From Anthoceros angustus (taxonomy: Eukaryota; Plantae; Anthocerotophyta), in assembly GCA_010909165.1 (NCBI GenBank), contig VJWM01000253.1, positions 62,001 through 126,000 of the forward strand: a DNA stretch of 64,000 bases. Direction: 5' to 3'. The notes below the pieces were generated by a model. The model was not told the DNA's origin. It saw only the letters and a list, made by a program, of their open reading frames with translations, and did no database searches. The position numbers and the translations under genes are program-made. Positions 17,219-58,610 of this stretch are shown piece by piece. The number at the start of each line of letters is the position of its first letter. Within the stretch, counting starts at the first letter, position 1.

Positions 17219-20200
17219 ATGGATAGGGGGAAGAGGCCTCTCGTAGAGTACCCTTGGGTATGGTGTAAGTGCACTAAGTGCATGTTAAAGGAAGAACATA
17301 GGCTCAATGTAGCATGGGAACATGAAGCACTATGGGGCTTGTATAGAGATAGTAGTACCGGCATTGAGGGTAATGGTTTTGCCCCGGAGAATGGGGCTAT
17401 TGGAAATGATCCAGGTGGTAATGTTGAGGTCCTGTTGATGGATGTTGACAATACTGTTGTTCCAAATGAGGAGCGGAGTCCCATTGAGGAGGATACAATG
17501 GAGATTGTAGAGGCTTTTGGGGGGGTTTCTAGAATCGCTGAAATGACAGCAGAAGAGGTAAATGCACTACCTGGAGAGGTGAAAGCGATGCATACGGCTG
17601 CAACCACACCATTATGGGATGGAGCTAAAATTTCATTGCTATCGTTTATAATGCAATTGCTCAATTGGCAAATGAGGGGACGCATTTCCAACACCAGCTT
17701 TGATGCCTTATTAAAACTCCTTTCAAAAGAGTGTCTGCCGATAGGGAACAAGGTACCTCATAACAAGGAAGAGTTGAGATTATTGTTAAAGCATTTTGGG
17801 TTTACCTTTAATAAGATTCATGCATGCCCTGATGATTGCATGTTATTCATGGGTGATTATGAGGATAAGAAGATTAAACAATGTGTATTTTGTAAGAAGA
17901 GTAGATATCGGTCTGATGCTAAAGGAGACTCCGTCCCAGTTAAGGTTTTAAGGTATTTTCCACTGAAGCCCCGAATTCAACAAATGTTTAGGTGCAAGGA
18001 ATTGGCAACGCTAATGCGATGGCATACAAAAAATGTGTCACAGGATGGGGTGATGCGTGTTCCTTCCGATAGCAAGGCATGGAAACATGTGGATTGTATA
18101 TACCCTGGGTTTGCACAGGAGCCACGCAACTTACGACTCGGGCTGGCAACAGATGGTATAAACCCTTTTGGTCATCAAAGCAGCAAGTATTCTATTTGGC
18201 CGGTCCTATTAGTAAATTATAATTTACCGCCCTGGTTGAGTATTCAAAATGGTCACATATTGTTATCGATGTTAATACCAGGCCCAAGACAAGTAAGAAA
18301 TGCAGATGTGTATTTCCAACCATTGATGGATGAATTGAATTTATTATGGGAAGAGGGTGTCCAAGTAGTTGATGCATCTATGCAGATTGGAGATCCAGGA
18401 CAATCATTTGTGGCAAAGGCTATTTTACTATGGACCATGCATGATTATCCAGGGTATTCATTTACTTCTAAGCTTCAAACAAAGGGATATCGTGCTTGCC
18501 CTCCTTGTTGGACAAACTTGCAGGCTAGGAATTCCAAGGATTTAAATAAAATGATTTATGATGGGAATTTTAGACTACATCTCCCTGATGATCATCCTTT
18601 CCGTGTTGAGGAAAAGGATATGTTTAATGGCAAAGCAGAGAGGCGTGTTTGGACCCCAGCACTAGAACCAACCCCTACCATGATCAAGCATGAGAGTACT
18701 TTAAGAAAAATTCACCATCCAGGGCCTCGAGGAGTGACTAGTGATATCCCCTCAATTTTTTGGGAGCTTCCATATTGGGAGGTAGGTTTTTTATATGGTT
18801 TTTTGCTCAGGTTTTTTTTTTTGCTTAATGTTTTTGTTCCAACCCTAAATTTTTTTCCATGTTCCCAGCATTTGTTGATTCGTCACTTGACGGACCCTAT
18901 GCACATTGGGAAGAACGTAAGCGAACAAATCTTGAAACATGTGACGGGCATTTGCGAATCCCTTGGTAGCCGTCGAGATCTGGAAGTTAGTAATACAAAA
19001 AATCCTCGCTGGTGGCCTCAAGAAGACTCAGATGGCACAGTGTGGTACGAATCTCCTGCACCTTGGGTTTTAGGGTACAATACAAATAAAAGTTTCAAAC
19101 AAGCGGAGGCAGAGTTGAGAGACCGAATTGCAACCTTATAACCCCCTACAAGATATGGATCAAACTTGAAGCGGTGCTTCTCTAAAGATTATGGGGATAG
19201 TATATCGGGGTTAAAGTCACATGATCATCATCTACTTTTAAGTGATTTATGGCCATTAGTATTAAAAGGTTTAATATCTAAAAGCGTTCATGAGGCTGTT
19301 TGTGGTCGTGGGACTTTGTTCAGGTGGATATGTTCTAAAGAAATCAAGATATCGGAGATCCCAGAAATGAAGGTGTTTGGAGCTGAAGTAATGTGTGTAC
19401 TAGAGCGAGAGTTCCCCACTTCATTTTTTTCAAGCCAGGTCCATGCTGTGATACACTTGGTTCACGAGATAGAATTATGTGGGCCTACAAGATATCGATG
19501 GATGTATTTTCTTGAAAGGCATATGAAAGTTTTGAAGGGGTTTGTACGACAGAGGGCTAAAGCGGAAGGTAGCATGGCAAGGGGATATCTCGCACAAGAG
19601 TCTATGTATTATTGTGCAGAATATATAGGCCAACAATGTGATGATGGGCCACGCTGTATGTGGACTGCAGCAGGTATTGAAGAACAATGTGGACAGGTGT
19701 TACAAGGAAAAGGCGAGCAATATACCCTGTCAGAGGTAGAACGGAAACAAATTACGACAGCAATGCTAGAAAATTCTGTTTTCACGGAAAAGTGGAGACT
19801 AGTATATGATGGAGTTCATACCAACATGTCTTTTGTGGATTGGCTACAAAATGAAGTAAAGGGGGCTATTTCATCAGACACTGTTTTGAATGAATATGGG
19901 CTGGACATATATGGACTAGTGAATGGCCCCGTAGCTGTAGCCAAATCATATTCAATGATGTGGGCGTATGGGAATCACATAAGGACGGAATCTTCTGATG
20001 TAGGAAACTTACAACTGATTGTATAATACAACAAAATTTCCTTAGTGGTCAAACATGCATAGATGTTGAAGATCAGATGCCATATGTGGGAACAGTGCAG
20101 AAAATTTTAAAGGTTGACTTTGGGTTGTCATCAACAGCTAATTTTTTAAAGGTTAAGTGGTTCAAACCAGTTTATGAGGATGCAAATGATCACAGCAAGG

Positions 20201-24303: not shown

Positions 24304-27300
24304 TCAGCCCATGAAGCTTGTCCCACCAGCGTTGATGGGGTCTTCGGCTGCTCCGCCAGCCACAAGCTCCAAGCCAGGCAGCTGGTAGCTCTGCTCGCTC
24401 CCGGGGACACTGTCGGAGTGTCGGAGTCCCAAAGTGAGGGAGACCACGCTCCCGCTACCTCCGCTGGCTCCGACGGAGCCGAACCTGCTGCTCCCCCCAG
24501 GCCCGAACCTGCTCAGGCCTTGGAAGGGGCCCAAGCTCGGGATGGTGCTGCCGCTCCCGCTCACCCCCTCTAGCCCTGGGGCAGGGCCGTTGCGCGCCTT
24601 TTTGCTGGCGCGGGCGTCCTCGTCCAGCCCCGCAGGACCCTCCGAGCCCGAGGCCAGAGTCTCCTCCATTGGAGACTCGTCCTGAGGAGCAGCCGGTGCC
24701 TCCTCCAACGCGAGAGCTGCAGCTCGCTGCTGGGCTGCCTCCTCCTCCTTGCTCTCTTCCAGGTACATCTCTTCCACCATTGGTTTCCAGAGACGTACCC
24801 GGGCGTTGATGAACCAGTTCGAGACCTGCACAGCCACAGCACAGTTCTTAGGCGTTGCGAGCGAGACATGTACAAACACTAGCTCTTCAGACAAACCATT
24901 TGCTGCCACAGAAACAAACCACAGCTGTCTTGAACAGCAAGCACTAGAAAATACAGGAGAAACGCTGAAGCACGCATCTGAACACAGAGAATTTAAGTGA
25001 AGGCTCCAAATGAAAGGCCTTCAACAGGCTGGACATCTTGTACACCAAGTTTTCAATTCAGACAAACCATTGCAAGTAGAAGATGTACTCAGTAAGAGCA
25101 GAAGTTACCTGGCTCCTTGTAAGCCCGGTCTGACGGGCCAGCGACATCTTGTCCCCATCCTTAGGATAGCTGCATTCACAACAAGCCAAACAAAAAGGGT
25201 CAAGACAGCTGTAGGGAAATCAAGATCTAACATTTGGTGGATATCATGTCATTCAACACTTCAGCAATAGCCGGTTCAATAGCCAATAGCCGGTTCAATT
25301 GGCATGATATTGACTTATTGGCTTATGACTTAGCCAATTATTAGCTCATTCAACACTTCAGCAATAGCCAGCATGTTCAACACTTCAAAATTATTGCCAA
25401 TAATTTTGAACGTGAACGAGAGCATGTGAAGGAGAGAACTTACGGATGGAGAAAGTGCTCAAAGAGCCAGGCTCGGAGGACAGTCACAGCCCTCTCCGGC
25501 AGACCCCGCTGGGGTCTCCAAGCATGCTGCTGGAGCATGCCCAGGTGCTGCAGCGCTCTCTGCTGCCGGAGCTGCTGGTCCACGAACCTGAGCCGAGGGA
25601 TCTCCCCTCGGGTCAGTGTGAGGGTGGGAGCGTCCTCCTCCCCCAGCAGCCTGTTGCAAACCCGAAGCTGCCCCTCGATGGTGTCCCTCAAGCCTCGGAA
25701 GTGCCTGGACATGGCCTCGAAGGCCAGATTAGTGTAGGACTGTGCAGCGCCCTTTCCGAGAGCCACGTCCATTGTGGTGATCACCACACGCATCTGCTCA
25801 GAATATCCTCTGTACGTGCCGTCAACCTGTGTATGCCACCGCTCACGAAGTTTAGTAACATGTAGAGTCGAGTGGTCAGACCTGTAAAAACATTCCTGGA
25901 CCAGACAATGTCACATGCGATCAGGAAGCGCTTGTGCCCATGCTCGAGAATGGACCCAGTGATGTCCCGTGACAAGCGGTTGGCAGCCACTAATAAGCAA
26001 GAGAGGTCACAAGCTTGAATGACAAAGCAAGCCCTCCACTTTCACATGAACAAACTGCTGCACGTAGACTCTTGCAAGAGCCGGACAAACTGGTAGGACT
26101 GATACAAAACGAAGATCAAACAAGCCAAGACAGTTCTCAAAACAAACCTCAATATAAGCAGAGCTAGCACGATGATACTGGTTGTCCAGCTGTAAGATGA
26201 AACAGATTATTCAAAGCTCAAATGTGTGAAGCACAAGTATGAAAAACCCAGAGCAATGAATGCAGAGAACATATGGAGTCAGCTCAAAATCAGACTGGTG
26301 TTAACAAACACCGGTGTTGACAAACACCGTGAAAAGGAAACTTGAACATTTGAAGAGCCTTACCTCCTCCATCATGCCGGTGAGCCTGGCCTTCTTGGCC
26401 TCAATCTGAGACCTCTGCTCCGGCGTGAGAACAGGAGGCTGGGGGGCAGGAGGTGGCCCGTTGGAACTCTCTCCTTGCTGGACTTTAGCACCACCTTCAG
26501 CGGCGCTGTCTCCAACCGCTCCCGCCTCCACAACAGCAGCCTGAGGAGCGGCAGGCTGCACAACAGTGGGTTGCAATGCAGCAGCAGCGGGCTGCTCACG
26601 CTGCTGGGCAGCTGCCCTACGGTGTGCATTGCCCCTGAGCCTGGCAGTGCAAGGAGAGCATATCTCATGGAGCAGCTCCCGGCCTGCTCTGGCATAGGTG
26701 CCTCGTAAGGTGAGAAGGCGGCCGAGAGGAGCAGCCTCCACGTCCACCTGACGGTATACTTGCTGTGGGCCAGAAGAGTTGTGAACAATGTGGCGCAAGA
26801 CAGGGAAGGGCTCCCTAGCATGGGGAGGGGCAGGGGTGCGGAAACGACTGAGAGAGGGATTGACACCTGGGTTGGACGGGCCAGCATGGTCGTGGAGAGA
26901 CAACCTAGCCTCAGCAGCAGCGGCCAGAGACATGACATCGGCGGGTCCAACAGCAGCAAGCTGCCCAGGAGCGTCGAGACAGGAGCGGCCTGCTTGCACA
27001 TTGGACTGCTGCTGCTGCGAGAAGAGGGACAGGGAGAGCCCCTGCCCGCTCCCCTGCACAGCGTCGGAGTCCGCCATGGACAAGCGGCCTTGGAAGGCCG
27101 AGTGTTGCTGCTGCTGGCTCTGTGCTCGACTCCGCTGCAGAACTTCGTAGTGGGAGAGCTGCTCCGCTACAGACTGAAAGCACTGGCTAGACTCCTGAGC
27201 AGACTCACTGGAAGGCAGGAAGGTGAGCTCCGTGTTCTCATGTCGCCAAGACCCGGAGCTGGTGGTGTAGCTGAATGGTGAAGCTCCCTGCCCGAGCTGC

Positions 27301-28721
27301 ATATTTGTAGCCAGGCTGAGGTGCTGAGAGGCGGTCTCGTCCAGGGCAGAGAGATGCTGTACTTGCATCCCTAGGCCTGCATTGCCCTGCCCCATCGCCG
27401 ATGCTTGCAACGGCAAGTTGAGGTAGCTGGGTTGGGACCCGCCGTGCCCCTGCCCCTGGCTCCCGCTCCCGTTCCCGCCAATTCCGAAGTCCGGATTGCC
27501 AGCTCCCCCTGAGCCCGAGGCCACCATCAAGTCGCTCACGCCTCCAGAGGCATCCGCGAAGCCCTGCCCATTGTAGGCGCTGAGGTACAGCTGCATCGCT
27601 GTATCGGAGCTGAATCCTTGCGCGTGGACCGACCCCGATCCCGATCCCGATCCCAGGGCCGCTGCAGCTGCAGAGCTCGCCGGTACAGAGTTTACGTTGC
27701 TGCTCCCAAACGCAGACAGCTCCTGTACGCTGTCATAACTGGCCTGGGCCCCGACCCCGTTGTAGAAAGAGGCTCCAGCCCCGTTCCCGTTGAAGAGCCA
27801 CAAATTGTTCCACCCCGAAGCCCTGGAGTCGGCATTCCCCATCGCCATGCCCTCCGCCTCCTGCTGCTGCTGGCTCGCAAAAAGCAGGCTCCCGGGCGTG
27901 TGAACAGTCTCGGAGCCGTGATCTCCCGCCTGCTGCTGCATCGCCAACGGCATCTCGCAGGTCACGCTCACATGAGTCTTGGGCAGCTGGCTGTGGTCCT
28001 TCTGCTGCTGCTGCAGAAGCGAGATCCTGTAAGCCTGAGAAGCCAGTTCATCGTCGTAATTGTCGTTCCCGGCTGGCGCGTGGAGCTGGGCTCCGCCATT
28101 ATGGCCCCCGTCGTAGCCCCTGAAAGCCCCGATCCCGTCTCCACCATGCCCAGAAGCTTCTGCCTCCTGGGAGTACTGCTCCCCAAACCTGAAGCTCCCG
28201 GGACCCCCCGGGTCCGCATCACCCCGGGGCGAGGACCCGCCCGCTCCGAGCTGCTCCCTCTGGTACTGCAGCTCCAGCATTCTGGAAGCGCCCAGACTGC
28301 TGCCTGCCACCCCGTCGGCCCACTCCGGCTGCGGACCCCTGCCCGCCTCGGCTCCCAGGCCCTCCCCTGGCCCACCCTGGTGGCTGTACCCGGCAGGCAA
28401 GAAGTTGTTCATGCTGTAGAGCAGCTGTTGCGTTGCCGCAGGGTGTTCGCGGAAGAAGTAGGCATTGGCCGCGTCCTGATCCTCCAGGTGCCGCCCCGCG
28501 TCTCTCCCCGCCATGGCCGCAACCCCGCTCACGTCCTCCGAGCTCTGATACAAGCTTGGGCCTGAGAGGAAGGAGAACTGCTGAGTGGCCCCGGAGCCCC
28601 GGTGGCCCGAGGCGTCTTCCTCCCCGTGCCCGCCCTGCAGATGCCCCGCCAGGCCGGTGGAGTCGAAGGTATGCCGTATGTCGTATCCCGAGATGGACTC
28701 CGCCACGCCAAGCATGCTCAT
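24304..28721 (-). CDS. BELL: BEL1-like (TALE) homeodomain transcription factor, about 1107 aa; exons 28721-26364, 25826-25444, 25169-25109, 24825-24304
   Basis: SKY-like box ([17 protein letters not shown]), BELL/POX domain ([23 protein letters not shown]...[13 protein letters not shown]), homeodomain [67 protein letters not shown], and ZIBEL motifs GLSLSL and VSLTLGL. Canonical GT-AG introns, including the typical 61-nt homeobox exon. Start codon inferred. Confidence 0.95.
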
Positions 28722-30029
28722 GTGCTGCTCCACCGTCCCATCCTGCCACTGCGAAGGGCGCTCAGTCCAAAGACAGTGTGAGATACGTAGGGCTCTGCTG
28801 GTTGGACATACACACAACGTCCATAGGTGGTCTGCCCTACTTCAAGCATACAAGCTTTGCTTGCACAACCTCTTGGATCAACACCAAGTTGGGAAGCTTT
28901 CTTGCAAGCAAGCACGAGATTTGCCTCTCGAGGCACAGATCTCGAGACACACCTCAAAGAGCAACAAAATCAAGGACGCTGTATGCATGCAGTAGATCTC
29001 CGCAATAAAGAATGCTATCTCTAGCAATATTGTATGGTAACTTACAGAGGACGGGTATGGCGGCCCAGGCTGGCTGTGGCTCCCCGGGCCCGAGTGCGAC
29101 CCCATGGTGCCCGCACCAGGGCGCAGGGTTGGAGATGGTGTAAGCTTGGATGAGATATGCTGTCCTTGGGCTCCACGTATGTCAAATTGATGGAATGCGG
29201 AATCGGCTCCGTCAAGCGGGAGCGGTCTGAAGCCCACGGCAAGGGAAGCGAAAACGCAAAATGAGGAAAGCGCAGGCAAGCTTGCGTAAAGTGAGCAGGA
29301 GCATGCCTAGGCAAGCTCCAGACACAGAATCCAGTGCCAAAAACAACAGCAATTCCAGGGAGCTCAATTAGCAAGAATGTGCGATGCGTTTGCAAGCAGG
29401 ATGGCTTAGAGCTCAGTTTACCGTCCTTGTGGCACAGCACGGGTGGGAAGCGTAGTTACCTAGAGCCACGAAGCCCTCACTCCTGGCGCAAGACACTACA
29501 AACCAGCAAAACCGACGCTACGTCACTCAGCTGGGAGAAAGCAAAGCATGCACAGTCCTCAGCACAAGAAGCGAATACCGCAGCGTTCAGAAACGCTCTC
29601 CATTCACAGACAATACAAGTCTCAGGGCCCGCACAAGCTCGCAAACAACAGCCTCATGGACCAAACAGCAGGCAAGATCAAGAGCTCTGCGTGGCGGCAG
29701 CTCGCGCAGGGATCCAACCGTGGGAGTTGATGTAGCCACCGGGTAGTTGAAGCTTGCAACGAGCCAGCAGCCGCAGAGACAGGCCTGCCCGTCCGGACGA
29801 GCAGCAATGAGCAGGAAAGAAGGTGCGGCAGCGGGAGAGGCAGTCACGCAAGCGGGAGGCGGAGGCAGGGATGGGGTCTGGGCAGCGTGATCCGTGGGCG
29901 GAGCTGGGCACCGGATCCGGATGGGGCGCAGGACGGGCCGGGCCGGGGAGTCGGGACGCAAGCTCGCTCGGGAGGCCAAGGCGAGAGATTGTGAGAAAGA
30001 GACCACGGTCCAAGACTATGAAAGGGAGA

Positions 30030-48683: not shown

Positions 48684-49178
48684 AAATTAATTGGTACAAA
48701 AATCATGCATTTAGTGATTTGTCTAACCACTGAGGAAAATGTTGGAAGTTATGGTCTTTGGATTAAGACAACCTCTTCTGAAATCGTCCTCACACTCTTG
48801 GAACGCCAGTCAATAATTCGTCCCGTCTACCATGGTGGCAAGAGAGTTTCGCTCATGAACAAGCATTTCCGTGCCTTGGTTATTGTACCCCTCCTCCTTA
48901 AATTTGACCAACTCCTCTATAACCCAACCTGGTCACAATTTCTCTCGTGACCAGGTTTTGTGACGTCTGTTGAAGATCTGCATCAGATAACTCGCACAAT
49001 TCGCGAGAAGTCCTGGGCGGTGACTTCGGTTTTTTTTAGTGACCGGCCTACTTCGATTTCACCCGAAAACTGCCCAAGCAAAACCACATGGAGAACCCTC
49101 TAGGCCCAAGCTTTCAATTTACAAATAGGACCTGGTCGCATCAGCAATCAAAGCGCCAGCAATGCCGAAGGTTTCTCT

Positions 49179-50651
49179 TCATCTTGCCTCGACTGGGCCA
49201 CTCATCAGATCCTTGGCGGCAGCCATGGAAGCCTCCCATGATGTGGAAGTTGACAGGAGCTTGGACAGCTGAACAGCCACATCCCGCATGTGGGGGCGAG
49301 ATGTTGGGTTTGGGTCCACACAGGACTTGGCAAGAGCTGCTGTCTTATACGCGTGATCAAGAGCGTACTGGTCTCGAAGAAGAGGATCCATCCACACCCT
49401 TAGCTTCATCCTGCTGTCATTGCTGTCTTCCATGATGCTAAAAATAGCCTCTGTGATCGAAGTCCTTCTGTACAAGTTCTGACCTTTGACCGGAACAAAA
49501 CCTACGGGCTCCTGGCCAGAGAGGAGCTCCAGCAAAATCACTCCAAAAGAAAAAACATCATACTTGAGGCTCACAATGCCCGAGAACACGTACTCTGGAG
49601 GCATGTAACCCAGAGTCCCTGCGAACTGCAAGCTTCTGGACTTGATAGGTCGCACTACTGCCAACGGGCTAGCCCTTCCGGATCCCCCAGCACCAGTCTC
49701 AGGCTGTATCTCAGCGCTGGATATCGAGTGCTCGCCGCTTGATCTGGAGAATGAGGTGGGATCTGCAGTAGGTGATTGACTTTCTCCTGTCAACTTGGAC
49801 ACACCAAACTTTGCAATCTTCGCCCTCAGATCACCGTCAATGATAATGCTGGAACTCTGTATCAACTTGTGGACGTAGGTTGGGTAGGCATACTCGTGGA
49901 GGTATTCCAGAGCCTTGGCCACATCCAAAGCAACCTGCGTGCCCCAGGTAACGCATGTCAATGTCAGGCAACAAGTTCAAAGCCATGCAGGAATAGAAAA
50001 GAATAATCAGTCCAGATGGCTCACCTGCAGCCTAGATGACCAAGATGCCAGAAGGCAGAAGTCAGGATTGGCAGGACTGCGAAGGGCGTGCCTGAGATTG
50101 ACACCTTCTGCGAATTCATGAACCAGGTACACACAGTCTCCTTCCACAAAGCATCCCCCTATGAGCCTCACGATGTTTATATGGTGCACACTGCAAAGAA
50201 GCTTCAGCTCGGCCAGAAAGTCCATGTCCTGTCTTTCATGTTTCTTCCGCGTTATTGCCACCTCCATCCCCAGAAGAGAAGCACGGTACACCGACCTGGA
50301 GACTCCGATGTTCCTAGAAGGGCTGAAATGGTCTGTGGCCTTGCTGACATCCTTGTACCTGTACACCACAGCCCCATCCGACACAAGCTGCCTCACATCC
50401 GCCAGAGAGCCGCTGCTGGCGGACTCCCTGGAGAAGGCCGAGTGCTGACCTGACGACGTGCTGCTCGACAGATTCAAACTCACATGCTCCTGGATTCTGG
50501 CCGGTTTAGCTTTGGCATGAGCTGGTGATGCTCGGCCTGGAGGAGCCATCTGCCTGAGTCCATCTCTGGGAAGCTGCTTACGCCCCGTGTTTTCTGTCGG
50601 TTCCTTAGCAGACCCAGGCTTGGAAGCAGTTGCACGCTTGAGGAAGCACAT
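49179..50651 (-). CDS. Receptor-like cytoplasmic kinase related to LysM-RLK kinase domains, probable pseudokinase, 460 aa; exons 50651-50025, 49934-49179
   Basis: YRYKDVSKATDHF, FLAELKLLCSVHHINIVRLIGGC, SWSSRLQ|VALDVAKALEYLHE, GTLGYMPPEYV, DVFSFGVILLELLSGQEP, CVDPNPTSRPHM. No signal peptide, LysM or TM segment. Resembles At3g57120-type proteins (from memory). Confidence 0.9.
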
Positions 50652-51891
50652 GCTGGTGGGTGCTCACACCACAGTCCTGCCCTCCTCTTCCCTTTGCAAC
50701 ATTCCCACAGCTCTGTCTTCCAGCATGCATCCTGAAAGCTCTGTTCGCCCACCTTCTCAGCAACTCCACCAAATAGCTTGCACTTCCCCAACCTGCCTCC
50801 CCCAACCCCACTCTCAACTTCTCCAGACAATGTTCATCCCTGCACCGGCAACCTCCAACACGATGTGGACATTCCTTCCACACCAGAGCTAGCACCCTCA
50901 AGACATGCGGGGCAGAGAAGCACAACACGGAGCTCCTCAACTCAGCAAAGCAGAGACACAAAGAGGGGGTCTCAGAGCAAGCGGGCAGCCCAGAGGGCCA
51001 AATTAAGGACCAGGCAAAAGCAAATCTTTCCTAGGACTTCAATCCCAGCCCGAGCAGTGGTTGCAAAACCGCTCCACAGCTCCAAATCTCTAACAAAGTA
51101 ATTGCCAGAAACCCGACACAAAGTCAGATCAGTGCGTGACAAGAGAAGGCCGGCACTGACTTCCTGGACCCTGGTGTATAATCCGCAAAAGCGAAGAGGA
51201 AGCAAGAAGCAGGAGTGGCGATCACAGCGCCTTGGCTGACATCAGGAAATAGTTACAAACATTGGTCAAGCCGACCGCAGGACCCCAGGCGCCTGGAAGC
51301 TTCACGCTCGGACTCGAGGGTGGTAACAGACTGAGATCCTGACGTCACAGGACACCATCTGGCGTCTAGCGCCAACTTCTAAGCCCGACTGCTGCTGTCT
51401 TATTCTAATCAGCATGCTGCGTTCACACACGCACACTCTGGCACAGACACGCCCGCTGCCGCAGCAGCAATCCTACCGCAGAGATCTTCGCATTTAGTAT
51501 CCAGTTAAAAGCCGCGGCAGCGTGTCGAGCCGACCGCACTTCGCGTGTCCGCCATAGCCGCGCCCAGAAAACCTCCTGGTAGGTGAAGCCGCTGATCGCG
51601 GACAGTTCTTGGCGGCTTCCCGGGCCCCTTCCGTGCTGTGAGTGGTGCCAACTGCACTTCCCGTGCCGAATTCGTGCACTGCTCACATCGCTCGGTCTGG
51701 ATATGGCCGCACTCCGCCGACTCGGGTGTCACAATGTAGCCCTCTTCACGCACTTCGTGTCTGTACTACTGTTGTCTGTCATGATGGGTGGCCATGGCTC
51801 ATTGGCAAGGACACACGCTTCCGTGATTCCATTAAACGGTGGGAACCCACAAAAATGGCGAGCTTGTACGTTGGAAGATACGACGCAACAG

Positions 51892-52476
<585 letters not shown>

Positions 52477-52510
52477 CTGTAGGGTCCGGTTCACAAGGCC
52501 GGCCGGGGAG

Positions 52511-54547
52511 TCAAGGACGGGAGTGGGGCATTCGTACATGTTCTGCGCTGACGATAACAGCTACTTCTGTTGGTGAAGGCTCCGACTCCGTGTCAGGGGG
52601 TGCTGGACAGTCGGCGGTGTCTGAGGCTGTAGCCAGAGCACTTGGGTCCTCTCCATCGATGACGTCCGCCTCTGATTTTGAAGAAGCGTCCTTGGGTAGC
52701 AAAACTCTGGCCCTGACATGGGTGCCTTTCAGAACCGAGGCCCGGAGGGATTCAGCCAGCTTGTCTACCGGGGCAGTCCCTGCTTTCAGAGTTACCCGAG
52801 CGGCTTGCTTCGGCGTTCCAGTCCTTGCACCGAACATGGTTACACTATCTACAACTCCTCCCAGCTTTTCTACGTGCTGCTCCACATCAAACCATGTTAC
52901 CTTAGGATCCAGATACCAGAGAACAAGCTTCTCTTTGTGAGGGAGTTCTTGAGCCTTGCGAGTAGGAACCCTTTGGGCAACCGGAGGTAGTGTTTCACTC
53001 GGTCCTGTGGGTAGCTTTTTCCCTGTTTCCGCCTCAATTTGCCTCTTCAGGTCCCTGAGTACCTTGATCTGGCTCAGCTTCTCTTGGGACAGCTTGTCCC
53101 AGTAGATACCTGTGTGCCCCCCGAGAGAACATTCCTGTTCTCAGCCCCCGTGCTCCAGTCCCACACAGAAGCCAGAATTCCAGATGGTATGGAGTTACCT
53201 GTAGGCTTTGGAATGGTCGTGTTGGTGCGGATGACTTGGGTAGGAGTGCAGATGATGTCCACCGGGACGTCATGTATAAGAAGTTTTTCCACTGGTATGG
53301 TGTCTACCAGCTGCTTATCATGCACTGACAACGCACATTTCTCTCATCAGGGGCAGAATCAGTGGCAGATCATACAGAACCAGGAAGGCCCATCATTCCA
53401 GCAACCGAAGGAGGGTAAGTAGACTACCTGATGTAACGATAAGTGTGGAGTCATCGATTGCACCCATGTAGCGCAGCAGACCATACTCCAACTCTGCAAA
53501 ACCCTGCAGAGTGCCGGAAGGAGCTGAATGGAGAGTCAAGGTGAAGGCACACAAAACAATCACAAGCCAGAAATGGATGCTGCGTCTTCTACCTCTCCTT
53601 TCCCGAGACGGGCACCAGTTGCAGGATCCACAGCCACAGAGCCAATAACAAGAAGATCCACCTTCAAGTCCGCCTTGACTGTGAGGGGCTTCCCATGCTT
53701 GGCTACCCCTGCTGAGGTGACAGACTCTTTAATCGCTTCAGTAGACAGAACGACAGGATCCAACAACGAAAAGAAGCCTGTCCGAAGCCGAGGCTGCGGA
53801 GTTATCATCTTCTTGCCCTCTGCATCCACACTCACGCCAGGATGCTTCAGGCCATGTGAGGACGCAAATACCATGTTCTTCACCCAAAATGCTTAATGCT
53901 CTCACCAGCCAAAACCAAGCGTCGCAGTAATTTCTGAGGAGTATCCGGATTCACTTTCACAGTCTTGGCAGCCACAAATTCTGGCAAACTTGCCACCTAA
54001 AACAGTTCCACAATGTTGAGGATGCACAGAAAATTCAGCAACGCACCCTCCAGAGAATGGAATGAACTCCACTAGAACCCAAACGCACATACAATGAAAA
54101 GAGCAGCACCTTCGTGGCTGCCACATTCGCACCAACGAAATTCGGAATCCGGTGGTGCACAGGTCGCGGGTTCTGGGCCAAGTTCTCGGCTTCCAGCAAG
54201 TCCCAAATCTTCTTCCGGATGGCCCACTTCCAAGCTCCAGGCTTCTCCTCTGCCCCGTCGGAACCAGCACCCTCTTCCTGCTCCACTTGACTCAGCTCGG
54301 CCGCCATTTGGTCCCGGGCCTCCGCGTCCAGCTGGAGCCGCTCCGCCTCGAACGCCTCCACGTCGAACGCCTGCTCCACCGCCGGAGTCGCCCCGTCCGA
54401 GGCCGTAGCGGAGCACAATCTGAGCCTGTGCGCCTGGTGCGCGCAGCGCTGTTGCAGCGGCCTGGCACAGTTAGTGGCGGGGAGCGACGACAGGGGGTGC
54501 CCCGACGGCACGATCACGGACGGCTTCAGCCCCAGTGCCTGAGCCAT
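52511..54547 (-). CDS. COG0212: 5-formyltetrahydrofolate cyclo-ligase-like protein (COG0212/MTHFSD) with transit peptide and C-terminal RRM-like extension, 518 aa; exons 54547-54110, 53996-53906, 53819-53593, 53503-53428, 53324-53199, 53109-52511
   Basis: [14 protein letters not shown]...[91 protein letters not shown]. All junctions are GT-AG and phase-consistent (1557 nt). Confidence 0.92.
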
Positions 54548-54984
54548 CGCTCTCCCCCCGCACCCCAGCATACGGAGCTCCTGCTTCCTCGCCGCCCGAC
54601 TCCACGATCACCGCACTCCGGCTAACCTAGCCCGCATCCTGCTCCCAGCAAGGCCGCCAGTCCCCCGCCTGCATCAAGCCCAGCAGCCTTCCATCCCCGC
54701 ACTGCAATCTGTCAGGGCCCAGTACGGTTTCCAGGCATCCAGGCTCCCGCACCCACCGAGACCTCCTCCCGCCGGGTGCAAAAGTGTAAACACAATAGTG
54801 AAATGTGTGTTTTTGAGGCAAATTGCACAGTCTGCAGATATATGGCCTCGGATAAGATCTCTGTGACTGTGAGCAGGAAGGCTCCAGGCACTTTTGTAAG
54901 TTGGGAGTTGTTTGCCGTAGCTGCTACGCTTGGATGAGATGCACAGCATGATATAGCCGTTCCTTCACTCCGACGGTTACTCTC

Positions 54985-55092
54985 TTGGGTCGTGTAAACA
55001 CGCAGACTTGGGTCGTGAGAGCACTCAAATTGGGTCGTGTAAACACGCAGACTTGGGTCGTGAGAGCACTCAAATTGGGTCGTGAAAACACG
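54985..55092. repeat. 45-bp tandem repeat (2.4 copies) in the COG0212/DUF4326 divergent intergenic region
   Basis: Unit ttgggtcgtgtaaacacgcagacttgggtcgtgagagcactcaaa. Confidence 0.95.
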
Positions 55093-55125
55093 AAGATAGG
55101 CTGTTGTAGGGCTTGCTGGGCGGCC

Positions 55126-55494
55126 ATGGTGCGGGCAGTGAACGGGTATAGGGATGGGTGGAGGGGCGAAGGCGTGGTTTACATCGGGAGGCGGAACCCC
55201 AAGTTCAACCTGGTGGGATCTCCGCTCGGCAACCCTTTCAAGATCGGGATGGACGGGGACAGGGAGGATGTTGTGGCCAAGTACAGAAGCTGGCTGGGGC
55301 AGCTGGTAAGCGAGGGGCTTGCTGGCCGCACCAACCCGCAGTTCCAGCACCTGATGGAGCTGGTACGTCTGGCGCAACCTGGAAAACCTGAGCTCAAGCT
55401 TGCCTGCTACTGTAAGCCTCTGGCCTGCCATGGGGACGTGGTGGCGGACTGGATCCATCGACTGTTGGAAAGCCACCAAGCTTCTCCTTCTTGA
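55126..55494 (+). CDS. DUF4326-family protein, 122 aa, intronless
   Basis: VVYIGRR...GSPLGNPF...DREDVVAKYRSWL...LACYCKPLACHGDVV is the DUF4326 signature. The ATG at 55126 is in a strong gccATGG context. The ORF-track start at 54985 only translates the tandem repeat. Confidence 0.88.
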   Translation: MVRAVNGYRDGWRGEGVVYIGRRNPKFNLVGSPLGNPFKIGMDGDREDVVAKYRSWLGQLVSEGLAGRTNPQFQHLMELVRLAQPGKPELKLACYCKPLACHGDVVADWIHRLLESHQASPS

Positions 55495-56639
55495 GGCATA
55501 AGCTGTTGTGAGCGCCGTGTACACATTGTGAGCAAACTTGATTGCAAGACATTCCAATTCAGCAAGGGCACTGCTCGAAGAACTGAACCCAAAGCGTGTT
55601 TGTTGATCACGATTTCTGTTCCCTTGGTTTGCATAGACGTTGGATGCGATCCGAAGGGTCTCCGCAAGTCGAACCTCTTCCCTTCGGCTGTGGAGTTTGC
55701 GGCTGTCTCTCCTTACACCTAATGTACATTATGTACTATGTATATTTCTTAATCAAGCCGGCGGTTAGGCAAACGCCCTAGTGTTCGGGGGCTTATACCT
55801 AGTAGTTTTAGCCAACTATGCTTTTACAAGATTTCTCCTGAGGGCTTGTATAACTCGGTATATGAAGATGAAACTATGTTTGATTATATATATTTGATCT
55901 TTTGTATATTATTCTATTTTTATTTAAATATAAAATATTTATATATTATCATTTCAAATCTCATAACTGATAAGTATTATAGTAGATGAGTAACTCCCTT
56001 TCTAGAGAGGTAGGTAAATACGTAATTAGAAACAACAACACTACCAGGCACCACCAGCACCATTGCCGTTGCTCTTTACTATAGCAAGAGTCAATAAGAG
56101 TACATGAGAGATTAGAACGAGCTCATCATCTTCACGTGAGTTACGTGCAGGGCTCTCACCCCTCTATCTCGTGCTCACAACTTTCCTCTAGACACACACA
56201 CTTTAGGCTCCCATAGTCTCTAAGCACCCAGTCCTATCCTCAACCACACTGTGGCACAAATGCTAGAATCCCCAAGTAACTGTCTAAAGCAAAGTGGCTT
56301 ACTTAAGCCCTAAGCAAAGCCTCACTACCACTAACCACATATGTTATTAAACTAGATCTAGGGTTGCGTAGTTCTCATGCATCATTTTTTCACCTCAATA
56401 AAAACTTCCACTTGCTTTTTACTAGATGAGTTCATTCAATCTCTTCTATAAAATAGATAAATTATACCTAGAACAAATCTATGTATGTACAATATTGTAT
56501 TTGTGGAGATGAGTAGAACTTGTCTTTTGATAGGCACTTGAATGATTATCATGTATTCACCCTAGAGATTTAGAAACATGTAAAGAGGCGTGATGCAATG
56601 TTTACTGCTCTTCTCTCTTTACACGTGATGAGACGGATT

Positions 56640-58610
56640 TCAAGGTGGAAAGGAAAGAGAGGATAGTGTTTGGTGTTTGGTGTTTGGCATGCCTTGATAC
56701 CCACCCGGAGTGGGTGGTCTTACAGGTTGATGTCGAGAACGCCTTCAATACCATTTCTAGGAGCGTCATCTTCGAGGAGCTTAGGGATGTCGGCGTCGGG
56801 AGCCTTATACCTTTTGTCCGGTGCTTCTACGGAGGTCCTCCAACCTCTACTACCGGCCTGAGCGTCTCTTGAGTTCTTGTCTGTCTTGGAATCGGCCATG
56901 TACTGTGCAAGGCGACCCCTAGCGGTGCTCTCTTCGCCATTGCTCACTATAGGGCCCTATCTAGGCCGCCTTCTCAGCCTTGACCCTTTTGTGACTGCAG
57001 CTCACATCCTCGGGGCTGGGACAAAGTTAAGGAGGCCTTTGAGCTCTTCTTTCATGAGCTTTCTTTGGTGGGCTTGAAGGTCAAGGGTCCAAGTGCAGCG
57101 TCTGGTCTCCGTCGGGATTCTACCTACGGTTCCATTGGGAGATTGCTCGGCTTTGGGGCTGCAGTTCTAGGGGTCCCCGGTTCCCGACTTCATCGGGAGC
57201 TTCTGGACCGGAGCTCTCGCAGGACCTCTCCCATGTCGAGGACCTCCTTTCTTTGGAGGATACAGTGGCCTTTGGAATTCTTTCCTCCTGCTTTGCTAGG
57301 CGCCTTAGTTACCTCATCCGCACGACCGCCCATCCCGACACTTTTGTCCATTGCGGTTTGATAGGAAGATTATGGATACTCTCGGGACATCACAGGCTCG
57401 GGGGCTTTTGAGTGCCCTATGGGCGTCGGCCCGGCAAGCGTCCTACACATGCAATTTGGAGGCAGTGCACCCTCTCTGGAGGTCTCTTCCCGGCGGCTTT
57501 CACAGGCGGTTGGGCCCCTCTTAGGCTTCTCGGTTCATCCTCCATGACAGCCCTTCGAGGATCTCGTATCAGTGTGGAGGAGGAACCTTCTCTCTCCAAA
57601 GCGTCCTTGAGGCAAGCTAGGGACATGTTATCGGTGGATGCTCGGAAGGACTTCCTCCTTTCTCGACATTTATTCGATGGTTTCGAGGGGTTGCAGGCTC
57701 CGCCGGCACCGGCCAAGCTTTCCGCCCATCCTCCAGACCCTCCATCCCCAGTCCACAAGAGCGGCCCGCCTTGTTCGGGAAGGGCGCAGTGCTTGGCTAT
57801 TGGCCCGCCCATGCATACGGGTTTCACATCGCACCAACCACCTTCACCATCGCGATGCGATTCCGTCTTGGCCTGGCCCACTGTGGCTTCTTCGCTCCTT
57901 ACTTGCGAGTGCGGCTCGCCTCGATGATCTGGGGTACCTTGCTCGTTGTCCCCACGGGGGTCATCGCATTGCCACTCACGACGCCATCCGCGATGTCATG
58001 TTCGCCATCGCCGCGAAAGCGCTACATGGCCTCGGAGGGGAGCGGATGTATACTCTCCGTCTGGTCGTTCAATCGGTGACACACCTTGTCCGTGGCGACC
58101 GTGTGCGGTGGCGTATGTGGTGGTTACCGATCCTACACGAGACACCATCTCCGCCAGTCATCACTAACTGCCCAGTTGTGCCGTCACGAGCAGCCTCAAG
58201 GTCCGCAAATATAGCGGGATGCAAGCGGGCCACCTCTTTATTCCGCTTGCACTAGAAATGTATGGGGCAATGGTCGAGGACTTTGACAAATTTGTCAAGT
58301 CCCTGCCAAGCTTACCATGCACGTAGACACTGCGGGCTGTCCTCTCGTACTTCACAAAGATACTTCCGACAACGGGTTTCAATTGCCCTTCAACGGCGCT
58401 CAACCCGATCCTCCACAAGGCGGCAGAGGGTGACGATCTTCCTCTACCTCCGTGGTTTGCGGCCGTTTATTCTTCCCGCATATGACATTGTGGGTGCAGT
58501 AGGTGACTTTAGGTAGGAAGCTTAGTTGCTCCTCTTCACCTCGACCCCCTGGTCCCCTTTGGTTGTCCCCTCCTAGATGGTTGTCCCATCGTTTTTTACC
58601 TCAATAAAAT
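56640..58610 (+). mobile_element. Decayed, 5'-truncated CRE-clade (RT plus restriction-like endonuclease) non-LTR retrotransposon
   Basis: VVLQVDVENAFNTISRSVIFEEL, LIPFVRCFYG, QGDPL.GALFAIAH, FRLGL, CECG...RCPHGGHRIATHDAIRD (CCHC), VVVTDPT, FIPLALEMYG, RQRVSIALQR. Many frameshifts. A-rich 3' end near 58605. Confidence 0.82.

What the first reader, a model, noticed from the sequence alone, without database searches (positions are those of the whole stretch)
55126..55494. Intronless prokaryote/phage-type DUF4326 gene embedded in a plant plastid-gene cluster: HGT candidate
DUF4326 (YIGR..S.(W/L)GNPF...R...Y..L.C(W/Y)C.P..CHGD) is known mainly from bacteria, phages and some fungi and protists, and I do not recall it from angiosperms. 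The N-terminus VRAVNGYRDGWRGEGVVYIGRRN..FNLVGSPLGNPF resembles cyanobacterial members as I remember them (unverified). The ORF is intact with host-like GC-rich codons and a strong Kozak context, and it lies head-to-head with COG0212, which argues for a domesticated, expressed gene rather than contamination. The conserved CxC...CH may bind metal. Function unknown.
Basis: partly seen in the sequence, partly recalled or inferred. Interest (0 to 1): 0.8.

Follow-up and report, generated by a model that had tools for sequence, protein, structure and literature searches.

The report
Phage-type DUF4326 gene in hornwort
A small, intact and transcribed gene of a type otherwise carried by cyanobacteria and their viruses sits among ordinary plant genes in a hornwort-type genome, so it is a real cross-kingdom gene transfer, and standard plant screens would miss it because they discard cyanobacteria-like genes.

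Summary
Window 55126-55494 (+) is an intact 122-codon ORF and a clear DUF4326 domain (Pfam E 2e-17) that keeps every residue invariant in its subfamily.

It is not contamination:
- An RNA assembly of the same organism holds an unspliced contig identical to 55055-55874. The same assembly holds correctly spliced contigs of the neighbouring COG0212 gene.
- Two related species carry the gene at 93-94% DNA identity in the same head-to-head position.
- Its codon GC3 (0.72) is host-like. Its nearest phage and cyanobacterial kin have GC3 of 0.25-0.28.

An exhaustive search of 1.84 billion proteins found only one relative above 52% identity. That is an intronless gene (57-58% identical) in an unidentified GC3-rich green eukaryote. 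The two form a clade (support 100/90) inside an N-terminally extended subfamily. Every named member of that subfamily is cyanobacterial, and its nearest unnamed members lie on cyanopodovirus-like contigs.

The best reading is an old horizontal transfer from the cyanobacterium/cyanophage gene pool. Donor and date are unresolved.

The function is inferred, not shown. It is probably a small enzyme with a RapZ-C/phosphatase-like fold that acts on phosphorylated ribose of NAD/ADP-ribose-derived molecules.

This is a new member of a known kind. Earlier notes of this scan describe other transferred genes in this genome, but not this one.

The parts
55126..55494 (+). Coding sequence of the stand-alone DUF4326 protein (122 aa plus TGA), with no intron
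   Evidence: ORF. Pfam PF14216 at E 2.2e-17. The RNA contig is colinear with the genome. AF2 model has pLDDT 95.9.
55405..55437 (+). Codons for C94-Y-C96-K-P-L-A-C101-H102-G-D104, the conserved Cys/His loop. It lies between strand 90-94 and helix 102-118, where phosphatase-fold enzymes carry their active-site loop.
   Evidence: C94, C96, C101 and H102 are invariant and G103 and D104 nearly invariant in 20 relatives. Secondary structure is from the model.
55010..55874 (+). Minimum extent of the unspliced mRNA: 5' leader of at least 116 nt and 3' UTR of about 380 nt
   Evidence: X2 RNA contigs, record 15 (55010-55084) and record 16 (55055-55874), have 0 mismatches. X2 has no depth in the bins spanning 54782-55009 and 55922-56263.
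54985..55096 (.). Tandem repeat of 45 bp x 2.5 at the promoter/5' leader. Its length differs in the two related species, and short-read contigs break here.
   Evidence: In X14 and X9, 44 letters replace the 93 nt of 54949-55041, which overlap the first part of the repeat.
54751..55009 (.). Spacer between the two divergent genes, not covered by RNA contigs in this organism. Inferred to be a shared bidirectional promoter region.
   Evidence: The X2 contigs end at 54750 and start at 55010. The promoter role is an inference.
54107..54750 (-). Exon 1 of the COG0212-type (5-formyl-THF cyclo-ligase-like) gene. Its CDS starts at 54571.
   Evidence: X2 spliced contig, record 14. Weak PF01812 hit at E 0.0037.
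53428..53993 (-). COG0212 exons 2-4 (53906-53993, 53592-53819, 53428-53502), separated by GT..AG introns on the minus strand
   Evidence: Joints in X2, X14 and X9. They show that X2 is RNA and that the flank is a eukaryotic spliced gene.
55755..55790 (.). Short high-copy repeat inside the 3' UTR
   Evidence: X1 DNA depth is 556 in this bin against about 12 elsewhere, with loose ends on both sides.

Best explanation
This is a real, expressed, intronless nuclear gene of an Anthoceros-type hornwort. It encodes a stand-alone DUF4326 domain.

Origin: the gene entered the plant lineage by horizontal transfer from the cyanobacterium/cyanophage gene pool. This happened before three related species diverged, and long enough ago for its codon usage to become fully host-like. 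It sits 554 bp, start codon to start codon, head-to-head with a COG0212-type gene, and probably uses that gene's promoter region bidirectionally (inferred).

Function: the protein keeps every invariant residue of its subfamily. It folds with high confidence into a small alpha/beta domain whose best solved match is the C-terminal domain of RapZ, followed by PTP/dual-specificity phosphatases. Its nearest relatives are fused to DarG-type macrodomains and SLOG domains, and the published prediction for the family points the same way. From this it most likely acts as a small enzyme on a phosphate attached to ribose, either in NAD+/ADP-ribose-derived nucleotides or on ADP-ribosylated or phosphorylated nucleic-acid ends (inferred, about 30-35% likely as worded).

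Shown: the gene, its transcription, its linkage, its conservation in three species, and its family and subfamily placement. Inferred: direction and date of the transfer, promoter sharing, and biochemical activity.
For: Family and intactness.

Transcription without splicing: X2 record 16 covers 55055-55874 with 0 mismatches, while COG0212 in the same run is spliced at four GT..AG introns. The flanking spacers have no depth.

Integration and conservation:
- X1 DNA contigs cover the whole region, breaking only at the tandem repeat.
- X9 record 20 and X14 record 13 each carry COG0212 exon 1, the spacer and DUF4326 on one contig. They show 5.9-7.2% differences, and no insertion or deletion is listed inside the CDS on these contigs, but 25 further indel rows of the run's table were not shown.

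Host-like composition: GC3 is 0.72, against 0.81 for COG0212 exon 1 and 0.25-0.28 for the genes on phage contigs and in Microcoleus.

Plant nature of the window: CACTA transposase, a weak BEL/POX-like match (below the Pfam cut-off), kinase, spliced neighbours.

Phylogeny:
- The exhaustive search gave 3793 hits, and only one representative exceeded 52% identity (P0115, 58%).
- In the careful ML tree, WINDOW+P0264 has support 100/90. It lies inside a 19-row clade (77/96) that holds all four contigs I checked, and all four are phage-like: DNA polymerase A, RNR, Thy1, endonuclease VII, RuvC, tail-fibre-like genes.
- The RNR of one such contig best matches T7-like cyanopodoviruses such as Syn5 and S-CBP4.
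- All named proteins of the subfamily are cyanobacterial: Laspinema, Microcoleus, Crocosphaera, Snowella, Roseofilum, Cylindrospermum.

Function leads:
- AF2 pLDDT is 95.9.
- RapZ-C is the top structural match at Z 6.7 over 94 residues, followed by many DUSP/PTP chains at Z 3.3-4.2.
- 13 of 20 relatives hit DUF488-N3a weakly.
- P0120 is DUF4326 + DarG-like macro + YpsA SLOG, and P0124 is DarG-like macro + DUF4326.
- Published predictions: PMC9503650 and PMC7824862.
Against: - The nearest relative of all is a gene in another green-lineage eukaryote. A single older acquisition followed by vertical descent and loss, or two parallel transfers, cannot be told apart.
- The backbone of a 122-column tree is weak. 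The AU test does not reject placing the plant pair with the core cyanobacterial group (p 0.155).
- Absence from other plants rests on annotated proteomes and gene calls. This very gene is missing from the protein collection, so similar small unannotated genes could be missed elsewhere.
- No dN/dS could be computed.
- No activity of any DUF4326 protein has been shown in the papers I could read.
- Fold matches are middling, with Z under 8.
- The species name comes from earlier notes of this scan and was not verified here.
Confidence: 0.7

Rival explanations
1. Ancient green-lineage gene. It was acquired once very early, either by endosymbiotic transfer from the plastid ancestor or by transfer into an early streptophyte or viridiplant. 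It was then inherited vertically and lost in most lineages, so hornworts merely retain it.
For: The closest relative (57-58% identical, clade support 100/90) sits beside a plant-type 3'-5' exonuclease gene in a GC3-rich green eukaryote. The subfamily is cyanobacterial. Composition is fully host-like.
Against: No other plant or algal protein appears among the best 150 of 3793 hits, or groups with the pair in the trees. No named plant appears among the best 120 of 4325 profile hits. In cyanobacteria and phages the gene is an accessory, phage-associated one, and the pair nests with phage contigs at 77/96. This scenario needs very many independent losses.
Confidence: 0.18
2. The gene is a remnant of an integrated giant virus or a gene carried by a transposable element, and it was brought in as part of a larger mobile insertion.
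For: DUF4326 occurs in giant viruses of protists (PMC9503650, PMC7824862). A retroelement lies just downstream (RT-like ORFs from about 56600). Related genomes hold DUF4326-like fragments elsewhere.
Against: No terminal repeats or other viral genes flank it. Matches on very large viral contigs are only 30-36% identical, against 52% for podovirus-like contigs. The position is fixed and syntenic in three species.
Confidence: 0.07
3. The ORF is a transcribed but functionless relic. It survives by chance, and its RNA is a by-product of the neighbouring gene's bidirectional promoter.
For: No function has been shown, selection was not measured, and the gene shares a promoter region with an expressed gene.
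Against: All 13 invariant residues are kept. The fold is predicted at pLDDT 95.9. No frame-breaking indel is listed on the syntenic contigs of the two species 6-7% diverged in DNA, although 25 indel rows were not shown, whereas the adjacent spacer has many indels. Composition has had time to shift from about 0.27 to 0.72 GC3 with the frame kept open.
Confidence: 0.04
4. The gene comes from contaminating cyanobacterial, phage or symbiont DNA that was mis-assembled into a plant scaffold.
For: Hornworts host cyanobacteria, so such DNA is present in samples.
Against: Independent runs of three species place the gene next to the same spliced plant gene. GC3 is host-like and very unlike cyanobacterial or phage copies. 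No database sequence is more than 58% identical.
Confidence: 0.01

Closest known systems
Cyanobacterial and cyanophage DUF4326 proteins with the N-terminal 'V-N-G-x-x-D-G-W/F-x-G' extension (e.g. Laspinema palackyanum WP_367290187.1, Microcoleus sp. A006_D1, proteins on cyanopodovirus-like metagenome contigs)
   Same: They align over the full length (residues 1-118), with the same invariant residues and 43-52% identity. Most are single-domain proteins of 110-130 aa.
   Different: Those genes are AT-rich (GC3 about 0.27) and lie in phage or bacterial gene arrays. This one has plant codon usage, a eukaryotic mRNA with a long 3' UTR, and plant neighbours.
Gene for P0264/P0115 in an unidentified green-lineage eukaryote (Logan contigs of SRR33208241/2)
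   Same: It is the closest known sequence (57-58% identical) and sister in the tree at 100/90. It is also intronless and stand-alone.
   Different: It has different neighbours, a WRN-like 3'-5' exonuclease instead of COG0212, and no synteny with the window. Its GC3 is 0.92. The organism is unknown.
Escherichia phage N4 gp12 and other phage DUF4326 proteins (483 phage records)
   Same: Same Pfam family and same core motifs.
   Different: They are shorter, lack the N-terminal extension, are 40-45% identical over residues 11-117, and fall in another part of the family tree.
RapZ C-terminal domain (PDB 5o5s/5o5q) and PTP/dual-specificity phosphatases, which the Aravind group places with DUF4326 in the rhodanese-phosphatase superfamily
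   Same: RapZ-C is the best structural match (Z 6.7, 94 residues), followed by a run of PTP-fold chains. The conserved Cys-rich loop lies at the strand-to-helix junction where these enzymes bind phosphate. PMC9503650 proposes this superfamily placement.
   Different: Sequence identity is only 6-10%. There is no CX5R signature, and the motif here is C-x-C-x4-C-H-G-D. RapZ-C is a ligand- and RNA-binding domain, not a proven enzyme.
Previously reported horizontally transferred genes of Anthoceros angustus (19 genes in 14 families, Zhang et al. 2020, PMC7027989)
   Same: Several of the published cases are likewise intronless, and they are described as embedded among plant genes.
   Different: The published donors are Actinobacteria, Alphaproteobacteria, Bacteroidetes, Firmicutes, Verrucomicrobia and fungi. 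No cyanobacterial or phage donor and no DUF4326 are mentioned in the text held. A 2025 bryophyte-wide screen excluded cyanobacterial donors by design (PMC12513842).

Membership tests
Pfam PF14216 DUF4326 | Match to the family HMM above the curated gathering score | tested here: met
   63.9 bits against a cut-off of 25, E 2.2e-17, profile positions 7-81 of 82. PHROG 464 matches at E 3e-26.
Pfam PF14216 DUF4326 | Conserved motifs YIGR, (A/G)NPF and C-x-C-x4-C-H-G-D | tested here: met
   All are present. The invariant columns N6, Y19, G21, R22, L34, N36, R46, L57, L92, C94, C96, C101 and H102 are kept.
Cyanobacterial/cyanophage N-extended DUF4326 subfamily | About 17 extra N-terminal residues (beta-strand, V-N-G-x-x-x-G-W/F-x-G) that align with subfamily members and are absent from N4 gp12-type proteins | tested here: met
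   Alignments run from residue 1-4 with P0115-P0133 and Microcoleus. Other bacterial and most phage hits start at residue 11-19 or later. The subfamily is separated from the short forms at 94/75 in the careful tree.
Rhodanese-phosphatase superfamily (RapZ-C / DUF488 / DUF4326 clade, as proposed by Burroughs and Aravind) | Rossmann-like alpha/beta fold similar to RapZ-C and PTP/DUSP | tested here: inconclusive
   RapZ-C is the top match of 48,161 chains and stands about 2 Z units above the rest. Many PTP/DUSP chains follow at Z 3.3-4.2, but all Z values are under 8. Foldseek found nothing.
Rhodanese-phosphatase superfamily (RapZ-C / DUF488 / DUF4326 clade, as proposed by Burroughs and Aravind) | Conserved active-site loop with Cys between a central strand and the following helix | tested here: met
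   The C94-x-C96-x4-C101-H102 loop lies between strand 90-94 and helix 102-118 of the model. Which Cys, if any, is catalytic is unknown.
Rhodanese-phosphatase superfamily (RapZ-C / DUF488 / DUF4326 clade, as proposed by Burroughs and Aravind) | Sequence-profile link to DUF488 | tested here: inconclusive
   13 of 20 subfamily members hit PF22751 DUF488-N3a, with best E 0.0035, below the cut-off. The window protein itself does not.
Rhodanese-phosphatase superfamily (RapZ-C / DUF488 / DUF4326 clade, as proposed by Burroughs and Aravind) | Phosphate- or thio-transfer activity | not testable with these tools
   This needs biochemistry. No assay of any DUF4326 protein was found in the nine papers that mention the family.
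Horizontally acquired gene in a plant nuclear genome | Physically integrated between vertically inherited host genes | tested here: met
   DNA and RNA contigs of three species join it to the spliced COG0212-type gene. The window holds plant-type genes on both sides.
Horizontally acquired gene in a plant nuclear genome | Transcribed | tested here: met
   An unspliced 820-nt RNA contig with defined ends is present in a run shown to be RNA by its spliced contigs.
Horizontally acquired gene in a plant nuclear genome | Nested within donor-group sequences in a tree | tested here: met
   The pair lies inside the cyanobacterial/phage subfamily, which is separated from the outgroup at 94/75, and within a 19-row clade at 77/96. 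The exact sister is unresolved.
Horizontally acquired gene in a plant nuclear genome | Absent from most other members of the recipient's wider group | tested here: inconclusive
   No other named plant or alga appears among the listed hits, but one unidentified green eukaryote has the sister gene. Unannotated genomes could not be searched.

The most novel reading that the evidence does not exclude
Hornworts, which house cyanobacteria inside their tissue, captured a cyanophage or cyanobiont counter-defence enzyme and now use it themselves. As a stand-alone DUF4326 phosphatase-like enzyme it would trim or inactivate NAD+/ADP-ribose-derived signal nucleotides (of the kind made by TIR-domain immune proteins), or repair ADP-ribosylated nucleic acids. 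In this way it would tune immunity or the cyanobacterial symbiosis. This would be the first phage-type ADPr-processing module domesticated by a land plant.
Probability: 0.1. Interest if true: 0.8.

Novelty: new member of a known kind. Interest (0 to 1): 0.5.

Why it matters
Transfers of bacterial and fungal genes into bryophytes are well documented. Genes that look cyanobacterial, however, are routinely discarded by plant HGT screens as presumed plastid heritage (PMC12513842), so a class of real transfers may be invisible. This case shows one. It is an accessory, phage-associated gene of cyanobacteria, fixed and expressed in a plant lineage that lives with cyanobacteria.

It also gives the uncharacterised DUF4326 family a member in a transformable eukaryotic model group. 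A knockout there, together with assays on NAD/ADP-ribose-derived nucleotides, could test the predicted activity.

The finding remains one more HGT-derived small gene of unknown function, and its date and donor are unresolved.

Tried and rejected
- The first word-index protein search gave only hits of 49% identity or less and missed the closest relatives. The exhaustive search was needed.
- The window's own protein is not on record in the protein or contig collections, so orthologue sequences of the related species could not be fetched and no dN/dS was computed. Only contig-level difference counts are available.
That scan used a single peptide pattern, so its bacterial sample is biased.
- The metagenome scan found nothing closer than 45% over most of the length. 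L144, at 58% over 57 residues, is two short-type tandem genes and not a close relative.
- PDB by sequence gave only chance-level hits, and Foldseek against PDB gave none.
- A transposon or viral-island origin found no support: there are no inverted or long direct repeats around the gene, no viral neighbours, and no synteny with L003.
- L003 is not the extra hornwort copy hinted at by the reads.
- The organism of SRR33208241/2 could not be named. A paper search for the accessions was blank and the second contig adds no genes.
- The 2023 Burroughs and Aravind paper on the rhodanese-phosphatase superfamily is not held. I only saw it cited, and what I say of its 'RapZ-C-DUF488-DUF4326 clade' is from memory.
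- The bacterial promoter/terminator scan is irrelevant to a eukaryotic gene and showed nothing of note.

Full report
**1. The observation**

Window 55126-55494 (+) is an open reading frame of 122 codons ending in TGA.
- It matches Pfam DUF4326 (PF14216) at E 2.2e-17 and 63.9 bits against a cut-off of 25, almost end to end on the profile. It also matches PHROG 464 at E 3e-26.
- In an alignment with its 19 best relatives it keeps all 13 invariant columns: N6, Y19, G21, R22, L34, N36, R46, L57, L92, C94, C96, C101 and H102.
- The start context is GCGGCC-ATG-G, with no upstream ATG in the transcribed leader.
- It is the only copy in the window.

**2. The surroundings are a plant nuclear genome**

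- The window holds a CACTA (Tnp2) transposase with DUF4218, a long ORF with only a weak, sub-threshold BEL/POX-like match, and protein-kinase exons. Directly upstream on the other strand is the first exon of a 5-formyl-THF cyclo-ligase-like (COG0212-type) gene.
- There are no tRNA or Rfam hits.
- Earlier notes of this scan call the genome the hornwort Anthoceros angustus. I did not verify the species. The run sizes (about 98 Mb of DNA contigs) and three related 'organisms' holding the locus are consistent with an Anthoceros-type hornwort.

**3. Integrated, transcribed, intronless, conserved**

Run X2 is of the same sample as the best DNA run X1, and it is RNA. Its 5250-nt contig joins the COG0212 exons 54107-54750, 53906-53993, 53592-53819 and 53428-53502 across four introns with GT..AG on the minus strand.

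In the same run, an 820-nt contig covers 55055-55874 with no mismatch and no joint, and a 75-nt contig reaches 55010. The bins spanning 54782-55009 and 55922-56263 have no depth. So the gene gives an unspliced mRNA of at least 865 nt with defined ends, transcribed divergently from COG0212. The two start codons are 554 bp apart.

The DNA contigs of X1 cover the whole region and break only at a 45-bp x 2.5 tandem repeat at 54985-55096.

In two related species, X9 and X14, single contigs carry COG0212 exon 1, the spacer and the DUF4326 gene.
- Across the DUF4326 part there are 28 differences in 478 nt and 43 in 596 nt. The listed indels on these contigs lie in the leader (55077, 55100) and none inside the CDS, though 25 further indel rows were not shown.
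- The spacer and UTR stretch has 67 differences and 18 gaps in 842 nt.

This is weak evidence of constraint. A proper dN/dS could not be done because the orthologue sequences cannot be fetched.

**4. Composition**

The gene's GC3 is 0.72, close to the 0.81 of COG0212 exon 1. The nearest phage-contig and Microcoleus genes have GC3 of 0.25-0.28. The gene has therefore been in this lineage for a long time. Contamination is excluded.

**5. Relatives**

- The word-index search found only hits of 49% identity or less on phage-like metagenome contigs.
- The exhaustive search of 1.84 billion representatives found 3793 hits. Only one exceeded 52% identity: P0115 (58%, E 7.5e-35), which shares a 90% cluster with P0264.
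- Their contig L003 has coding GC of 70-77% against about 50% in spacers. It carries, 2.3 kb away, a 3'-5' exonuclease gene whose best named matches are streptophytes (Klebsormidium, grasses; 48-49%).
- So the closest relative is an intronless gene in another, unidentified, green-lineage eukaryote. There is no synteny with the window, and it is not the extra hornwort copy hinted at by the reads.
- A profile search listed 120 of 4325 subfamily members. Every named one is cyanobacterial: Crocosphaera, Microcoleus, Snowella, Roseofilum, Cylindrospermum and a Cyanobacteriota MAG. No plant was listed.
- The family is abundant in phages, with 483 phage records including N4 gp12, but those are shorter forms. 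IMG/VR and JGI metagenomes hold nothing closer than 46%.

**6. Trees**

- A quick tree of 147 rows put the window with P0264/P0115 (SH-aLRT 91).
- A careful tree of 105 subfamily rows (122 columns) gives the pair 100/90. It lies inside a 19-row clade (77/96) that contains all four contigs I inspected.
- All four are phage-like: DNA polymerase A, ribonucleotide reductase, Thy1, endonuclease VII, RuvC, HNH, peptidase M23, tail-fibre-like genes and many ORFans.
- The reductase of one of them best matches T7-like cyanopodoviruses (Syn5, S-CBP4, SS120-1) and Microcystis phage Mic1.
- The backbone is weak. An AU test does not reject moving the pair into the core cyanobacterial group (p 0.155).

The conclusion is that the donor belongs to the cyanobacterium/cyanophage gene pool, and which of the two is open.

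**7. Origin scenarios**

- Transfer into the hornwort lineage, with a second, related transfer or an older shared one explaining the other green eukaryote, fits best.
- An endosymbiotic or very early origin with massive loss is possible. However, the gene is a patchy, phage-associated accessory gene, and no other plant or alga groups with the pair.
- I found no sign of a transposon or giant-virus island. Matches on very large viral contigs are only 30-36% identical.

**8. Function (inferred)**

- AlphaFold2 with the 20-row alignment gives pLDDT 95.9 and pTM 0.89. The secondary structure runs strand 2-6, strand 17-19, helices 46-65 and 71-82, strand 90-94, helix 102-118.
- Foldseek found nothing in the PDB.
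- The exhaustive structural comparison puts the C-terminal domain of RapZ first (Z 6.7, 94 residues), followed by many PTP/dual-specificity phosphatases and, weakly, NADAR/YbiA (Z 3.3-4.2). All values are middling.
- ESM Atlas matches are DUF4326 clusters, mostly viral, some fused to mSLOG, YAcAr or DprA-like domains.
- The C94-x-C96-x4-C101-H102-G-D104 motif sits in the strand-to-helix loop where phosphatase-fold enzymes bind phosphate.
- Thirteen of 20 relatives hit DUF488-N3a weakly.
- Close relatives are fused to DarG-type macrodomains (P0120, P0124), a YpsA SLOG domain (P0120), an HTH (P0136) or a polymerase-beta thumb (P0182).
- The Aravind group places DUF4326 in the rhodanese-phosphatase superfamily and predicts that it processes terminal phosphates on ribose in ADP-ribose or its breakdown products, linking NAD-based signalling with DNA modification (PMC9503650, PMC7824862).
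- A preprint notes DUF4326 fused to an AMP-binding anti-Avs-like domain in amoeba viruses.
- From memory, their 2023 paper names a RapZ-C-DUF488-DUF4326 clade. I could not read it.

I therefore propose a small enzyme acting on ribose-linked phosphate in NAD/ADPr-derived nucleotides or at modified nucleic-acid ends. No N-terminal targeting peptide is present, because the domain starts at residue 2. Whether the Cys/His cluster is catalytic or binds zinc is untested.

**9. Literature and novelty**

- Nine papers mention DUF4326, and none concerns plants. PF14216 appears in none.
- The A. angustus genome paper lists 19 transferred genes in 14 families, from five bacterial phyla and from fungi. No cyanobacterial donor and no DUF4326 appear in the text and supplement held (its Table 31 was truncated).
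- A 2025 bryophyte-wide screen excluded cyanobacterial donors by design, which would hide this gene.
- Other agents of this scan have described other transferred genes in this genome, but not this one.

**10. Verdict**

This is a real, expressed, horizontally acquired DUF4326 gene of cyanobacterial/cyanophage type in a hornwort-type genome. It is a new member of a known kind. Interest is moderate, and rises if a role in NAD/ADP-ribose signalling or in the cyanobacterial symbiosis is shown.

Noticed in passing
window 55224-55288 and 55352-55414 (reads only): Related species hold a second contig (805 nt) that matches only the GNPF..DGDR part of the gene, with a 4-nt gap at 55261. This organism's DNA run holds an 845-nt contig matching 55352-55414 at 87%. 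These are probably further DUF4326-like copies or fragments elsewhere in these genomes.
   Followed up: partly
window 54503-54757: Six clustered C>T differences separate the DNA contig of run X1 from the window. The RNA contig of the same sample agrees with the window at the four sites it covers (54503-54698). This could be an allele, an error or something else.
   Followed up: no
window about 49000-53324 (left of COG0212): The spliced RNA contig that carries the COG0212 exons is 5250 nt long, and it runs on for more than 4 kb beyond 53300, towards the PSA2 region flagged in note s1-273971. This could be one long or fused transcript, or merged overlapping transcripts.
   Followed up: no
window 54985-55096: A 45-bp x 2.5 tandem repeat (sub-period 22-23, core TTGGGTCGTG) lies in the promoter/5' leader. 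Its length differs in the two related species.
   Followed up: partly
window 17219-20026: A CACTA/En-Spm-type transposon with long open reading frames: a Tnp2 transposase of 640 aa and a DUF4218 ORF of 286 aa.
   Followed up: no
window 26304-28817 (-): A very long single ORF of 838 aa with only a weak BEL1-type POX match near its C-terminus, in the most GC-rich part of the window.
   Followed up: no
window about 56600-58300: ORFs resembling reverse transcriptase, suggesting a non-LTR or other retroelement, lie directly downstream of the gene. Short high-copy repeats sit at 55755-55790 and about 56298-56358.
   Followed up: no
L144:1502-1639 and 1930-2082: A soil metagenome contig carries two short-type DUF4326 genes in tandem.
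   Followed up: no
L003:703-1839 and 4166-4561: In the unidentified green eukaryote, the sister DUF4326 gene lies 2.3 kb downstream of a WRN-like 3'-5' exonuclease gene on the same strand. In the second run the two appear as separate contigs, as if they were separate transcripts.
   Followed up: partly
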